A stretch of DNA of 64,000 nt, taken from Octopus bimaculoides (lineage: Eukaryota). Within the stretch, counting starts at the first letter, position 1; every line of letters starts with the position of its first letter. The translations under genes and the position numbers were made by a program. Location: the NCBI RefSeq assembly GCF_001194135.2, contig NC_068989.1, forward strand, positions 44,242,330-44,306,329, read 5' to 3'. Below are positions 32,732-59,945 of the stretch, piece by piece. The notes below the pieces were generated by a model that was not told the DNA's origin, made no database searches, and saw only the letters and a program-made list of their open reading frames with translations.

Positions 32732-32789
32732 TCAAGAGGTTTCGATGATTTGGTTCATGCCACACGGATATCCAATCCAGTTTGGTAAA
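32732..32789 (-). CDS. tim: Timeless terminal coding exon ((D)LPNWIGYPCGMNQIIETS*)
   Basis: Acceptor tctgtcctcag, phase 2 as required; stop TGA at 32732-32734. The 19 exons total 2401 nt (1 nt + 800 codons) with no internal stop. Confidence 0.72.
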
Positions 32790-33145
32790 CTGAGGACAGA
32801 AACAAAATGAAAGTTAAAAAAAACAATTAAACCAAAGAGCAATGTTACTATGACAACACTTAGAGAATACTGCTATGGCAAATAACTAAATATCATTCAA
32901 TTTGGTTAGCCTATAAAATATTTCCGATTTAGACATGAAGCCAGCAATTTTGAGTGATGAGCTTAGTCAATATCCACTACAAGACACTGGTACTTAAATG
33001 GTCCTTTATTTTATTGATCCTGAAAGGATGAAGGGCAAAGTTGACCTCCATGGCATTTGAGTTCAGAATACACAGCGATAAAAGAAATATTGCAAGGCAT
33101 CTTATCAGACTTCCTAAAAAATACGCCTACTCATTGCTTCAGTAT

Positions 33146-33183
<38 letters not shown>

Positions 33184-33807
33184 AATAATAAGGTACTCAG
33201 AGATATGGATGGTTGTACATTTACAGATTTTTATTGATATGTTACATGTTTTTATAAATTATATATTAGCGCTTGCGTCTATCTAATAGATTCTTCAGAT
33301 TTTGAAGAATCTATTAGAGTAGACGCAANNNNNNNNNNNNNNNNNNNNNNNNNNNNNNNNNNNNNNNNNNNNNNNNNNNNNNNNNNNNNNNNNNNNNNNN
33401 NNNNNNNNNNNNNNNNNNNNNNNNNNNNNNNNNNNNNNNNNNNNNNNNNNNNNNNNNNNNNNNNNNNNNNNNNNNNNNNNNNNNNNNNNNNNNNNNNNNN
33501 NNNNNNNNNNNNNNNNNNNNNNNNNNNNNNNNNNNNNNNNNNNNNNNNNNNNNNNNNNNNNNNNNNNNNNNNNNNNNNNNNNNNNNNNNNNNNNNNNNNN
33601 NNNNNNNNNNNNNNNNNNNNNNNNNNNNNNNNNNNNNNNNNNNNNNNNNNNNNNNNNNNNNNNNNNNNNNNNNNNNNNNNNNNNNNNNNNNNNNNNNNNN
33701 NNNNNNNNNNNNNNNNNNNNNNNNNNNNNNNNNNNNNNNNNNNNNNNNNNNNNNNNNNNNNNNNNNNNNNNNNNNNNNNNNNNNNNNNNNNNNNNNNNNN
33801 NNNNNNN

Positions 33808-34098
33808 GCATATGGCTCAGTGGTTAGTGTCAAGCTCACAATCATGAGGTAGTGAGTTCGATTACCAAACCGGGCTGTGTGTTGTGTTCTTGAGCAAGAC
33901 ACTTTATTTCACGTTGCTCCAGTTCACTCAGCCATAGAAATGGGTTGCAACATCACTGATGCCAAGCTGTATTGACATTTGCTTTTCCCTTGGATAACAA
34001 CGGTGACATGGAGAGGGGAGGCTGGTATGCATGGGTGACTGCTGGTCTTCCATAAACAACCTTGCCCAGACTTGTGCCTTGGAGAGTAACTTTCTAGT
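33808..34098 (+). mobile_element. SINE family B; further copies at about 60220-60515(+) and 42375-42640(+, related head)
   Basis: A tRNA-like head (ggctcagtggttag...gagttcgatt) shared with family C, followed by a distinct body ending ggagrgtaactttctag. Confidence 0.75.
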
Positions 34099-34741
34099 TT
34101 TTTTGTTGTTGTTTTTTTACATTGCTCCAATCCACCCAGATGGCAAAAATGAGTAGTACCTGTATTTCAAAGGGTCGGCCTTGTTACATTCTGTATGATG
34201 CTGAATCTCCCTGTGAACTATGTGAAGGGTACATGTGTCTGTGGAGTGCTCAGCACGTTAATTTCATGAGCAAGCTGTTCCACTGATCAGATCATCTGGA
34301 ACTCTTGTCATAGTAACCAATGGAGTGCCTGCTTTAATGTTCAGTGATTAAAGTCAGGATGCATATACAATTGCAAACTACAGTTTTGATACTTATGAGC
34401 GTAATGGCTAACTGAGTTGATCAGAATACTAATGGCTATCCAGCTGAAGGGTCAGCAACTTGGTTTTTCATGACCAACCCTATGTGGTATCAATAAGGCA
34501 ATTCCTGTTAAAAGTTACCATGTCAAAATGCACAGTTCCCTGTTGTCTGCAGTGGGAGCACTGAATAACTAACAAGTATTTTGTTAACTTCTGGAAAAAG
34601 TTAAAATTCTCTTGTGGGTCTAGAGGAAACTAAAGGAACCAGCCAATAATATAGACAGCTAATTGTCTAAAAACTGCTAGTGGCTCAAGACAGGAGATAC
34701 CGAACACACGAAAGAAGACAGTGGAGAAGACATAAACTTAC

Positions 34742-34844
34742 TCAAAAGTTTTGTTTGATGAGACTGTGGTTTCAATATGCTCTGGATATCTTGAGAATGC
34801 TTTTGACATATTAAATCCCAGCATATCATCCAAATTAGATTTGT
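34742..34844 (-). CDS. tim: Timeless C-terminal tail exon ((D)KSNLDDMLGFNMSKAFSRYPEHIETTVSSNKTF)
   Basis: Acceptor atttctttgtag, donor gtaagt; 103 nt, phase 1-2. Confidence 0.72.
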
Positions 34845-35688
34845 CTACAAAGAAATAAGAAATATAAATAAACAGGGATATCTTTTTTTTTTGTTTATTT
34901 TAATGTTTTTAGATATTGAATAAGTCATTAAGGATAAAATTTGTGGTACCATTCAAATTAATATTGCATACATGCATGCACACACACACACACACACATG
35001 CACATACATACATATATGTCATCATCATCATCATCATTTAACATCACTGCTCCATGCTAGCATGTGTTGGATAAGTTGACAGGATCCAAAAGGTCAGAGA
35101 GCTGCATCGTGTTCCAATGTCTGCTTTGGTAAGGTTTCTACACCTGGTTGCCCTTCTTAATAGCAACCACTTAGCAACAAGTATTGAAAATTTTTTTTTT
35201 TTTTTTTTTGTGACACCTGCACCACTGAGGTCATTGTGCAGCTTGCGAGGCTACAATCCCCTTTGGTTGAGGAGATTGACAGTAGGGAGAGAAACGACTT
35301 TAGGCTTGATATTGTATCATCATCATCATCATTTAACGTCCATTCCCATGCTGGCATGAGTTGGATGGTTTGACTAGAGCTAGCAAGCTGAAGAGCTGCA
35401 CTAGACTCCACTGTCTGTTCTAGCATAGTTTCTATGACTGGATGCCCTTCCTAACATCAGCCACTCCCTGGAGTGTACTGGGTGCTTTTTTTATGTGACA
35501 CTAGCATTGATATCAATTCTACTGTGGTGAACAGGTCTTCTTGAGTACAGCAGTCTGATAGATATCTCAGTTCTTCGTTAACGCCTTTCTAAGGCTCAGT
35601 GTTTTGAGATTGGTGTTCAATACTTCATCCTACATCTTCCAGGGTCTCCCTCATCCAAAAGTTCCATCCACTTTAGGTGATTGACACT

Positions 35689-35752
<64 letters not shown>

Positions 35753-57720: not shown

Positions 57721-58240
57721 ATATACTATTTTATATCAATTTGTAGAGGCATTCCTACAGGTTCTTCTTTTTATTACTTTAATATATATCTGGCACTCCC
57801 TCAGTTACAATGCTGAGGTTTCCAGTTGAACCAATCAACAGAACAGCCTGCTCATGAAATTAATGAGTGATCCACAGACATGTATACCATTAATGTAGTT
57901 CTCATGGAGATTCAACATGATACAGATTGTGACAAGGCTGGCCCTTTGAAATACATGTACTACTCCTTTTTGCCAGCTGAGTGAACTGGAGCAATGTGAA
58001 ATGAAGTGTCTTGCTCAAGGACACAATGCACCACTGGATATCAAACCCACGACCTTATGATTGTGAGCTGAATATCCTAGCCACTATACTATGCAACTTC
58101 ACTTTTTTAATATATGGTAAAATAGCTATTACAAAAATTGTTAAAAAACTGAAAGGTTTATTTTCAATGGTATAGTATACACCACAAAATGGCGTATACT
58201 ATACTCAAGAGCAGAACAAATATAAAGACCAAAAACTTAC

Positions 58241-58301
58241 TCTAGAAGGGTGGATTAGGAGTGTTAAAAGAATTTCATCAAGTCCACATTCAAACATATT
58301 T
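58241..58301 (-). CDS. tim: Timeless exon ((K)NMFECGLDEILLTLLIHPSR)
   Basis: Acceptor tttttttctag, donor gtaagt; 61 nt, phase 2-0. Matches [20 protein letters not shown]. Confidence 0.88.
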
Positions 58302-58773
58302 CTAGAAAAAAAGAAGAAAAGAAAGATATTGAAACATTTTGACAGGAGTAACTGGATGGAAAGACGTCATTATACATTGATATTACAACATGTAAAGGAG
58401 CAAAAGAACTTGTATATGAACCACTCAGACTGTTCAAAGCAGCAGTCAGACCTCAACTAACATATTCTCTAGGATGTTGAAATGAAGACCACATGCTTAA
58501 ATTTAAACAACAGAACTATTAATCCTTTAGCATTTAAATCAGCCAAAATATTCTATCTGGTTTATGTTAAAACTGGCCAGATCCAGAATCTCACACATAC
58601 CCTACAATGTCATTCTAACAATAAACAATCACATCATTGAAATCTCAAAGCTATGAGATAATACATGGTTAATCCAAAACAATGTGAATTGATAAAAATT
58701 ATATTTGACAGAGTAATCTGAATGCTAAAGGATTAAGCCACAATAAAGGCAGAAAATAATAGTGAGTCCTTAC

Positions 58774-58886
58774 TTAATGAACTTGCATTGGATATCTGCA
58801 GATCCCATATCTCTATCCCAAACCTGTACATACAACAAGTTACGCATGAGTAAGAGGAACTGGTTAATAAATTCTTTGTTTTGAGC
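58774..58886 (-). CDS. tim: Timeless exon (AQNKEFINQFLLLMRNLLYVQ...IQCKFI)
   Basis: Acceptor catcgttgcag, donor gtaagg; 113 nt, phase 0-2. Matches the TIM motif INNCLLLLRNILHIP. Confidence 0.9.
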
Positions 58887-59138
58887 CTGCAACGATGAAA
58901 CAAAAAGAAGATCCATTGGTAAAGAATTATATAAAATTTAGTTTAATGTGCAGTGTAGTGTGGAGTGGTTCTGCTGAAGTGGTATAACATGGTATGAAAT
59001 GGTGTGGTGTGGAGTGTTGTGTAGTGTCATGATGTTGTGTGATGGTAGTGGAGTGTGGTAAGGTTGTAGTGTAGTGTGTTGCAAGATGATTTGATGTGAT
59101 GATGTTGTGTGATATGATTTTCATTTTGTGGTATGCTG

Positions 59139-59353
59139 ACTGCAGTTGAACATCAGCCTTATGACCACTGCAGTTAAACATCAGAGTTTTGGTGATTGCA
59201 GTTTTACATTAGCTTTATGGACACTGCAGTTGAACATCAGCCTTATAGAGACTGCAGTTTTACACCAGCCTTAGATCTCTGCAGTTGAACACCAGCCTCC
59301 TGGTGAGTGCAGTTAAACATCAGCCATTTGGGGAACTGCAGTTGAACATCAGC
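59139..59353 (+). repeat. 28-bp minisatellite with a conserved head (CTGCAGTTRAACATCAGC) and variable tail, 8 copies
   Basis: The tandem units can be read directly from the sequence. Confidence 0.85.
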
Positions 59354-59764
59354 AATGAATGGACTGACTAAGTTCAACATAGGCACAAGCATAGCTTGTG
59401 GTAAGAAGTTTGTTTTCCAACCACATGGTTCTACGTTCAGTCCCACTGTGTGGCACTTTAGGCAAATGTCTTCTACCATAGCTTCAGGCTAACCAAAGCT
59501 TTGTGAGTAGATTTGGCAGATGAAAACTAAAAGAAGCCAGTTGCATGTGTGTGTGTGTCTATTAGCTTAACGAGTGTTGGTTTATGCATGTTCCAGCAAC
59601 ATGGCAGTTTGGCAAAAGAGACCAATAGAACAAGTAACAGGCTTAAATTGAAAAAAAGCAATAAGTACTTTGTTCAACCAAACCCTTTATGATGGTACCC
59701 CATGAATGAAACAAGTAAAAAAAAGACAAAAGGTACAAGATTATTACAAAATTGTATGACTAAC

Positions 59765-59945
59765 CTTCTGAATAATTGGTTTGACATGAGAAAATAAAAG
59801 GTCAAGTGATTCTTGTTGGCAGAAGAGCAGCTTGATATATTGTAAATGGTTAATGATTTCATTGACGACGTCTGTGTTCCTAGACTCATGACGGAAGTTG
59901 TTTGGGAATAGACATTCTATGGGTTCTGTAAGTTCGGTTAGAACT
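59765..59945 (-). CDS. tim: Timeless exon, most 5' visible ((R)VLTELTEPIECLFPN...SHVKPIIQK)
   Basis: Acceptor tctatttgcag, donor gttagt; 181 nt, phase 2-0. Aligns to fly TIM IRILVNLTVPVECLF...KHILES in the N-terminal TIMELESS domain. Confidence 0.9.

What the first reader, a model, noticed from the sequence alone, without database searches (positions are those of the whole stretch)
32732..59945. Hidden 19-exon Drosophila-type timeless (tim1) clock gene, much more compact than fly TIM
Seen: 19 GT-AG exons splice in phase into an uninterrupted frame of about 800 codons. Established: motifs such as NDxIFTMMHHxxGD, YFxWLxxFFLK, WLQxxLxE and RIPxFWT identify tim1, the light-degraded PER/CRY partner, rather than TIM2/TIMEOUT; tim1 is known in some other lophotrochozoans. 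Inference: adding ~85 missing N-terminal residues gives roughly 880-890 aa against about 1400 aa in fly. That would be a stripped-down, fly-style light-resetting clock component in a probable cephalopod.
Basis: partly seen in the sequence, partly recalled or inferred. Interest (0 to 1): 0.75.

Follow-up and report, generated by a model that had tools for sequence, protein, structure and literature searches.

The report
Octopus timeless clock gene, already annotated

Summary
Nineteen minus-strand GT-AG exons (59945 to 32732) splice in phase into 799 codons plus a stop. They are 100% identical to residues 112-910 of RefSeq XP_052826627.1, "protein timeless isoform X1" of Octopus bimaculoides. 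All three assembly gaps named in the finding lie inside introns. Orthologue transcripts and a gap-free related genome show no hidden exon there.

The tim1 assignment holds on three tests:
- The protein scores 283 bits against fly TIM (8DD7) versus 117 against human TIMELESS.
- In a 37-protein tree the TIM1|TIM2 split has 200/200 bootstrap support, with the octopus protein inside a mollusc TIM1 clade.
- It carries the dTIM-specific deletion: 63 aa between two conserved motifs, against 179-225 aa in TIM2.

The predicted length of about 885 aa is right (isoform X2 is 885 aa; X1 is 910 aa through an extra 75-nt cassette exon at 62113-62039).

Nothing is hidden or new. The gene is annotated in three Octopus species, and an iScience 2025 paper already reports cephalopod dTIM at 874-920 aa with a shortened centre. 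Fly's ~1400 aa is the outlier. Light-dependent degradation remains untested inference: the fly PER-binding site 1 and C-terminal CRY-binding tail are absent, and octopus also has mammalian-type CRY.

The parts
62039..62113 (-). Extra 75-nt in-phase cassette exon (25 aa, LDGICCGGFSMPSCHSSCESSTLFK).
   Evidence: Exact match to P0003 residues 87-111, flanked by AG/GT. Absent from X2 (885 aa), Argonauta and decapodiform proteins. The ORF is kept in O. sinensis and O. vulgaris, with 17/25 aa identical. It falls in an alignment gap against fly TIM.
59765..59945 (-).
   Evidence: aligns to fly TIM ~80-160
58774..58886 (-). Exon 2 (113 nt; AQNKEFINQFLLLMRNLLYV...)
58241..58301 (-). Exon 3 (61 nt; NMFECGLDEILLTLLIHPSR)
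56945..56998 (-). Exon 4 (54 nt; FCWSVNIVQLLSLLYTDK, end of ARM1)
55785..55939 (-). Exon 5 (155 nt). It encodes almost the whole short central linker, 57 aa in cephalopods.
54831..54900 (-). Exon 6 (70 nt; TILNSFNSQFLLLGFAPLVSDLK, start of ARM2)
53725..53834 (-). Exon 7 (110 nt; contains YFMWLLIFFLK)
53284..53397 (-). Exon 8 (114 nt)
51736..51851 (-). Exon 9 (116 nt)
51092..51278 (-). Exon 10 (187 nt; LRDLIVTNH motif). The junction with exon 11 spans the dTIM-specific deletion.
48908..49106 (-). Exon 11 (199 nt; NDSIFTMMHHVAGD, PER-binding site 2 region)
45859..45968 (-). Exon 12 (110 nt; DVMEYVMHKF)
44862..44979 (-). Exon 13 (118 nt; poorly conserved acidic/Ser linker)
42965..43148 (-). Exon 14 (184 nt; LLWLQTVLLETYFVKY)
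42203..42259 (-). Exon 15 (57 nt)
38422..38622 (-). Exon 16 (201 nt; TIMELESS_C core, FPHIPAFWT)
36386..36595 (-). Exon 17 (210 nt)
34742..34844 (-). Exon 18 (103 nt)
32732..32789 (-). Exon 19 (coding part, 58 nt including the TGA stop at 32734-32732; ...LPNWIGYPCGMNQIIETS*)

Best explanation
This is the Octopus bimaculoides orthologue of Drosophila-type timeless (tim1 / dTIM), already annotated in RefSeq as 'protein timeless' (X1 XP_052826627.1, 910 aa; X2 XP_014776081.1, 885 aa). The window carries 20 of its coding exons on the minus strand. The exons for the first ~86 residues are not found in the window and probably lie beyond its end.

Shown here: the protein keeps the two armadillo-repeat blocks (ARM1, ARM2), the PER-binding site 2 region with the TIM1-specific deletion, and the TIMELESS_C core. 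It is short for three reasons. The disordered linker between ARM1 and ARM2 is only 57 aa (about 340 in fly). A small helical module after the DLIEY motif is missing. The long fly C-terminal tail has no counterpart.

Inferred, about 40% likely as stated: as in fly, the conserved N-terminal peptide (MEWNLMN..., encoded upstream of the window) and the ARM1 groove are bound by light-activated Drosophila-type CRY, which O. bimaculoides possesses, so that TIM links light to the clock. The octopus also has mammalian-type CRY and lacks PER-binding site 1. Core repression is therefore more likely PER/mCRY-based, with TIM as a modulatory or light-input arm using PER-binding site 2 only. That would be an ancestral bilaterian arrangement rather than a stripped-down fly clock.
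For: - Identity: 824 residues are encoded with 100% identity to P0003/XP_052826627.1. The cassette-exon sequence is the O. bimaculoides version, not the O. sinensis one.
- TIM1 type: fly TIM 8DD7_B scores 282.7 bits (E 6e-83) versus human TIMELESS 7PFO_K at 116.5 and C. elegans 8OUW_K at 52.9. In the NJ tree (37 proteins, 511 columns) the TIM1|TIM2 split is 200/200, the cephalopod clade 200/200 and the mollusc TIM1 clade 199/200; Mactra and Laodelphax each have one protein on each side. TNH-to-MMHH spacing is 63 aa, versus 60-65 in all TIM1 and 179-225 in TIM2, which is the diagnostic named in the literature.
- Compact architecture is real: 869-878 aa orthologues are read from single uninterrupted ORFs on 3.1-4.6 kb contigs from 10 read sets. 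Argonauta is 878 aa. Published cephalopod lengths are 874-920 aa.
- Partners: the N-terminal MEW..MN motif is conserved across TIM1. DCRY and MCRY are listed for O. bimaculoides.
Against: - No expression, rhythmicity or interaction data for the octopus protein were available here.
- The fly C-terminal CRY-interaction region is not alignable: the alignment ends at fly residue ~1134. PER-binding site 1 is absent.
- The authors of the dTIM survey themselves question whether mollusc dTIM binds PER at all.
- dTIM function already varies among insects.
- Transcript evidence comes from decapodiform relatives, not from O. bimaculoides itself.
- The N-terminal exons are not in the window.
Confidence: 0.9

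Rival explanations
1. It is a dTIM orthologue by descent but no longer works as a PER partner or light-degraded protein. Having lost PER-binding site 1, the small helical module and any fly-like C-terminal CRY domain, it would serve another role (for example a scaffold or an mCRY-related role), or only a weak modulatory clock role as in some insects.
For: The central linker is 57 aa and the module is absent. The fly tail is not alignable. Published doubt exists about PER binding in molluscs and annelids, and dTIM is retained at low substitution rates even in echinoderms and hemichordates that lack PER. The role of dTIM varies among insects.
Against: PER-binding site 2, ARM1 and the N-terminal CRY-pocket peptide are strongly conserved. 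Cephalopods have the lowest dTIM substitution rates. dCRY is retained in octopus, and loss of dTIM is always accompanied by loss of dCRY, which suggests the two function together.
Confidence: 0.35
2. The true protein is much longer (about 1400 aa) because coding exons are hidden in the three assembly gaps or were missed in the introns.
For: Three gaps (109, 397 and 479 N, lengths only estimated) lie within the gene.
Against: All gaps are intronic, with matching phases on both sides. Orthologue proteins are contiguous across each junction, including two read from intron-less transcripts. In the gap-free locus L001 the equivalent of intron 6/7 has no exon. Even if fully coding, the gaps could add at most ~328 codons. 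A search of the gap-free introns for the missing helical module found nothing.
Confidence: 0.02
3. It is the TIM2/TIMEOUT (mammalian-type Timeless) replisome fork-protection factor, mis-called as tim1.
For: The two paralogues share Pfam domains (PF04821, PF05029, PF27570).
Against: The TIM1|TIM2 split has 200/200 bootstrap support with the octopus protein on the TIM1 side. It lacks the ~180-225 aa TIM2 insert. Its score to fly TIM is 2.4-fold that to human TIMELESS.
Confidence: 0.01
4. It is a decaying pseudogene or a gene-prediction artefact.
For: The models are computational RefSeq predictions, and the X1 cassette exon abuts an assembly gap.
Against: There are 799 open codons (chance ~1e-25) and 19 canonical splice pairs. 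The same architecture appears in Argonauta, cuttlefish-like genomes and transcripts. Published substitution rates are low.
Confidence: 0.02

Closest known systems
RefSeq 'protein timeless' of Octopus bimaculoides (XP_052826627.1/XP_052826628.1 isoform X1, 910 aa; XP_014776081.1 isoform X2, 885 aa)
   Same: It is the same gene. Residues 87-910 of X1 are encoded in the window at 100% identity, exon for exon.
   Different: Nothing differs in the coding sequence. The window lacks the exons for residues 1-86.
Cephalopod dTIM as described in 'Coevolution of Drosophila-type timeless with partner clock proteins' (iScience 2025, PMC12049834; bioRxiv 10.1101/2024.12.25.628932)
   Same: Length is 874-920 aa, the central part is short with PER-binding site 1 absent, and sequence is highly conserved. 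This matches the 885/910 aa and 57-aa linker found here.
   Different: From the passages I read, I could not tell whether the paper notes the Octopus X1 cassette exon or the missing helical module after DLIEY.
Drosophila melanogaster TIMELESS (PDB 8DD7 chain B, CRY-TIM complex)
   Same: ARM1 (octopus 2-249 to fly 2-237), ARM2/PER-binding site 2 (297-586 to 580-870) and the TIMELESS_C core (678-806 to 1000-1134) align, at 282.7 bits. The N-terminal M-[DE]-W motif is shared.
   Different: The octopus has 48 instead of 343 residues between the first two aligned blocks, 92 instead of 130 between the second and third, and about 104 instead of about 264 after the third. This removes the fly NLS/PER-binding site 1 region and the C-terminal CRY-interaction tail. 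It has ≥20 coding exons in the window alone, in contrast with the exon fusion reported for holometabolous insects.
Bivalve TIM1 (e.g. Mercenaria, Mactra, Sinonovacula 'timeless-like protein 1', Dreissena, Mytilus; 920-1029 aa)
   Same: They form the sister group in the mollusc TIM1 clade (199/200). ARM2 length is the same (263-265 aa) and the WLQ-to-FPRIP spacing is the same (72-75 aa).
   Different: Bivalves keep a 166-183 aa central linker and the helical module between DLIEY and WLQ (147-167 aa there versus 116-120 in cephalopods). Their C-terminal tails are shorter (85-103 versus 135-143 aa).
TIM2 / TIMEOUT / mammalian TIMELESS (e.g. PDB 7PFO chain K)
   Same: It is a paralogue with the same armadillo architecture and Pfam domains.
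   Different: It forms a separate clade at 200/200. TIM2 carries a 179-225 aa segment between the TNH and MLHR motifs where TIM1, including octopus, has 60-65 aa.

Membership tests
Drosophila-type TIMELESS (tim1 / dTIM) | Groups with known dTIM proteins, and apart from TIM2/TIMEOUT, in a phylogeny that contains both paralogues from the same species | tested here: met
   NJ tree with Kimura distances, 37 proteins, 511 columns, 200 bootstraps. The TIM1|TIM2 bipartition is 200/200. The octopus is inside the cephalopod clade (200) and mollusc TIM1 clade (199), together with Pyrrhocoris 'Timeless-d'. Mactra and Laodelphax are present in both clades.
Drosophila-type TIMELESS (tim1 / dTIM) | dTIM-specific deletion in the PER-binding site 2 region relative to mTIM (literature diagnostic) | tested here: met
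   The D-x-I-x-T-N-H to T-M-M-H-H-V-A-G-D spacing is 63 aa in octopus, 60-65 aa in 11 TIM1 and 179-225 aa in 6 TIM2.
Drosophila-type TIMELESS (tim1 / dTIM) | Closer in sequence to fly TIM than to human or nematode Timeless homologues | tested here: met
   8DD7_B scores 282.7 bits (E 6.2e-83), versus 7PFO_K 116.5 bits and 8OUW_K 52.9 bits. Single exons give the same ranking.
Drosophila-type TIMELESS (tim1 / dTIM) | Conserved N-terminal peptide that enters the CRY flavin pocket (M-[DE]-W-...) | tested here: met
   MEWNLMNVDG... is present in the RefSeq protein whose residues 87-910 the window encodes. The consensus across 12 TIM1 is MEWxxMN, and it aligns to fly residues 2 onward. These residues are encoded outside the window, so the window itself does not show them.
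Drosophila-type TIMELESS (tim1 / dTIM) | PER-binding site 1 / NLS-containing central region (an insect-type functional module; not required for family membership) | tested here: not met
   The central linker is 57 aa, versus 214-253 aa in Hemiptera and ~340 aa in fly, with no alignable sequence. This agrees with published absence in Mollusca.
Drosophila-type TIMELESS (tim1 / dTIM) | C-terminal CRY-interaction domain of fly TIM (an insect-type functional module; not required for family membership) | tested here: not met
   The alignment to 8DD7_B ends at fly residue ~1134, and the octopus tail of ~104 aa has no match. The literature places this domain's similarity within insects.
Drosophila-type TIMELESS (tim1 / dTIM) | Light-dependent binding by dCRY and degradation; heterodimerisation with PER; rhythmic expression | not testable with these tools
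   Only indirect support is available: DCRY (and MCRY) are listed for O. bimaculoides in the CRY/photolyase survey.
TIM2 / TIMEOUT / mammalian-type TIMELESS | Clusters with TIM2 and carries the long segment between the TNH and MLHR motifs | tested here: not met
   It is on the opposite side of a 200/200 split, with 63 aa instead of 179-225 aa.

The most novel reading that the evidence does not exclude
The only parts I could not match to the annotation or to the passages of the literature I read are two details. First, coleoid cephalopod TIM1 has lost the small helical (Myb-like-position) module between the DLIEY and WLQ motifs, which bivalve and insect TIM1 retain. Second, Octopus species carry an in-phase, Cys-rich 25-aa cassette exon (62113-62039) that inserts into an ARM1 repeat next to the CRY-contact region. 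The most novel reading not excluded is that alternative inclusion of this cassette is a regulated switch that alters dCRY binding or TIM stability. It would be an octopus analogue of the isoform-based tuning of light or temperature sensitivity known for fly tim.
Probability: 0.12. Interest if true: 0.35.

Novelty: already known. Interest (0 to 1): 0.1.

Why it matters
The result mainly validates the first-stage reader, who reconstructed a 19-exon gene, its paralogue type, its taxon and its full length correctly from raw sequence. Biologically it adds nothing to what RefSeq and the 2025 dTIM survey already contain. Cephalopods keep a short, slowly evolving Drosophila-type TIM alongside both dCRY and mCRY. 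The open question is whether such short TIMs, lacking PER-binding site 1 and the fly CRY-binding tail, still bind PER and are degraded by light. That question is real but already posed in the literature, and it needs experiments rather than sequence analysis.

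Tried and rejected
- a protein-database search with two concatenated exon peptides returned only two exon-sized fragments. It still led to the related genomic locus L001.
- a fly TIM sequence recalled from memory was used only as a tblastn probe to locate exons. All conclusions rest on database sequences and PDB alignments.
- greedy exact-peptide mapping picked spurious 5-mers. It was replaced by maximal exact matches of 6 aa or more.
- Biopython's distance calculator timed out. 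It was replaced by a numpy Kimura-distance NJ with 200 bootstraps. No maximum-likelihood program was available.
- human TIMELESS recalled from memory was used only as bait to fetch real TIM2 sequences. No cephalopod TIM2 appeared among the 120 listed hits, so whether octopus has a separate tim2 was not tested.
- a search of the gap-free introns for a cryptic exon encoding the helical module kept by bivalve and insect TIM1 gave only one chance hit (E 8.7), which I rejected.
- Rejected readings: hidden exons in gaps, TIM2 identity and pseudogene (see the rival explanations).

Full report
**What is in the sequence.** The window is AT-rich (36% GC) and holds 12 assembly gaps. Two of the clearest exon peptides already match fly TIM (PDB 8DD7 chain B) better than human or C. 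elegans Timeless.

A comparison with a related, gap-free cephalopod genomic locus gave 12 colinear conserved coding blocks. This locus (L001, ENA ERZ21867824) was found through an exon-sized database hit. With AG/GT boundaries and phase bookkeeping, these blocks spliced into an open 558-codon frame.

**Identity of the gene.** Searching that partial model returned P0003, 'protein timeless isoform X1 [Octopus bimaculoides]', 910 aa. Maximal exact matching places P0003 residues 87-910 on 20 minus-strand exons at 100% identity.

- They total 2401 nt, that is 799 codons plus TGA. Every exon is flanked by AG and GT, and phases are consistent.
- By base composition, 799 open codons have a chance probability of about 8.5e-26.
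- The cluster look-up gives the accessions: XP_052826627.1/XP_052826628.1 (X1, 910 aa) and XP_014776081.1 (X2, 885 aa). Counterparts exist in O. sinensis (910/885 aa) and O. vulgaris.
- The window's cassette-exon sequence is the O. bimaculoides version.
- Residues 1-86 are not found in the window.

**The gaps.** The three gaps flagged by the scan's program lie in introns 5/6, 6/7 and 18/19. No exon abuts them, and the reading phase matches across each.

Orthologues are contiguous across these junctions. Two of those orthologues (P0005, 878 aa; P0006, 869 aa) are read from single uninterrupted ORFs on 3.1-4.6 kb contigs from ten independent read sets. For a gene with 20 or more introns, that means spliced transcripts. 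In gap-free L001, mRNA residues 292/293 flank a 388-bp intron equivalent to the window's gap-containing intron 6/7. Hidden exons restoring a fly-like length are therefore effectively excluded.

**tim1 or tim2.** Three independent tests agree.

1. The full protein scores 282.7 bits (E 6e-83) against fly TIM. It scores 116.5 against human TIMELESS and 52.9 against C. elegans TIM-1.
2. I fetched TIM2/TIMEOUT-type proteins from molluscs, annelids, arthropods, vertebrates and a sponge and TIM1-type proteins from cephalopods, bivalves and Hemiptera. In a neighbour-joining tree (511 columns, 200 bootstraps) the TIM1|TIM2 split is 200/200. The octopus protein sits in a cephalopod clade (200/200) within a mollusc TIM1 clade (199/200). 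Mactra and Laodelphax each contribute one protein to each side.
3. The literature names a dTIM-specific deletion in the PER-binding site 2 region as the feature separating dTIM from mTIM. The spacing between the flanking motifs is 63 aa in octopus, 60-65 aa in all TIM1 and 179-225 aa in TIM2.

**Where the compactness comes from.** Against fly TIM the aligned blocks are octopus 2-249 to fly 2-237, 297-586 to 580-870, and 678-806 to 1000-1134. The roughly 490 missing residues break down as follows:

- about 295 from the ARM1-ARM2 linker;
- about 38 between the second and third blocks;
- about 160 from the C-terminal tail.

Motif-anchored segment lengths show the same pattern across TIM1:

| Segment | Cephalopods | Bivalves | Hemiptera |
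|---|---|---|---|
| Central linker | 57 aa | 166-183 aa | 214-253 aa |
| DLIEY-to-WLQ | 116-120 aa | 147-167 aa | 142-150 aa |

Cephalopods lack a helical module in the DLIEY-to-WLQ segment that all the others keep. No relic of it exists in the gap-free introns. ARM2 (260-269 aa) and the WLQ-to-FPRIP core (72-75 aa) are invariant in length.

Total lengths of TIM1 elsewhere are 920-1029 aa in bivalves and 950-1111 aa in bugs. Fly's ~1400 aa is the outlier, and cephalopods are the short end of a continuum.

**What is already known.** The dTIM survey (bioRxiv 10.1101/2024.12.25.628932; published as iScience 2025, PMC12049834) makes these points:

- dTIM is '874-920 aa in cephalopod mollusks'.
- Cephalopods show the lowest substitution rates.
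- The authors speculate whether mollusc dTIM binds PER at all.

The CRY/photolyase survey (PMC9498864) lists O. bimaculoides with MCRY, DCRY and CPD-II photolyase. The gene, its paralogue type, its compactness and the open functional question are therefore all on record.

**Mechanism.** Shown: the protein is a dTIM orthologue retaining ARM1, ARM2/PER-binding site 2, the TIMELESS_C core and the N-terminal M-E-W peptide (the last is encoded outside the window).

Inferred: light-activated dCRY binds the N-terminus and ARM1 as in the fly structure and couples light to TIM stability. With mCRY present and PER-binding site 1 absent, the core repressor is more likely PER/mCRY, with TIM as an accessory or light-input component. 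I put about 40% on that full statement and about 35% on the rival that the octopus protein no longer acts as a PER partner or light-degraded protein. Only binding and degradation assays can decide.

**Verdict.** The gene is neither hidden nor novel, its compactness is typical of its clade and published, and the 'fly-style light-resetting' function is untested. The finding is already known and of low interest.

Noticed in passing
window 62039-62113 (-): A 75-nt in-phase cassette exon encodes a Cys-rich 25-aa insert (LDGICCGGFSMPSCHSSCESSTLFK) within an ARM1 repeat. It is included only in isoform X1 and lies 14 nt from assembly gap 61213-62024. The ORF is kept in O. sinensis and O. vulgaris but is less conserved (17/25 aa) than the rest of the protein. 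It is absent from Argonauta and decapodiform sequences and falls in an alignment gap against fly TIM.
   Followed up: partly
window 42965-45968 (-), exons 12-14: Cephalopod TIM1 lacks the ~25-45 aa helical module (W-x-x-E-E...W-Y... segment) between the DLIEY and WLQ motifs that bivalve and insect TIM1 keep. The introns here are gap-free and contain no relic of it (best hit E 8.7).
   Followed up: yes
window approx. 3718-3942 (+): An exon-like open frame with polypyrimidine-AG and GTAAGT boundaries encodes a beta-class carbonic anhydrase segment (C-x-D-x-R ... H-x-x-C zinc-site pattern). The best PDB match is 5SWC_A at E 6.5e-12. It is probably part of a neighbouring gene on the opposite strand to timeless.
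   Followed up: partly
window 6845-7336 (-): A Tc1/mariner-type transposase remnant matches the Sleeping Beauty catalytic domain (5CR4_A, E 1e-15). In-frame stops upstream show it is decayed. A similar remnant lies in L001 at 8441-8861.
   Followed up: partly
window 41413-41922 (-), inside timeless intron 15/16: Two adjacent open frames of 109 and 60 aa (…RCSNIRGRLTGKIVFVCGRCTG…, …HVMRMDEDIWVRKYL…GRSRPRKTWDVVVKHDL…) look like the C-terminal part of a non-LTR retrotransposon ORF2. This rests on my own recognition only and was not tested.
   Followed up: no
window 48368-48761 and 59132-59353 (introns 11/12 and 1/2): Two intronic tandem arrays: a 19-bp unit x 20.6 copies (68% matches) and a 28/56-bp unit x 7.9/4.0 copies.
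   Followed up: no
many places, e.g. 2518-2790, 3490-3640, 18582-18998, 39218-39451, 43460-43629, 46472-46744, 55018-55149 (both strands): A short interspersed repeat recurs throughout the window and in timeless introns. Its translations read …WLDALPN.NHS.S…, …NPCQHGK..L.DDDD…. Most assembly gaps abut (TA)n/(TATA)n-type microsatellites (translated 'IYIYIY'), which probably caused the gaps.
   Followed up: no
L001 9832-10011 versus window 49107-51091: The intron between exons 10 and 11 is about 180-190 bp in the cuttlefish-like relative but 1985 bp in octopus. The 13 exons covered by L001 span about 16 kb there versus about 20 kb in the window.
   Followed up: no
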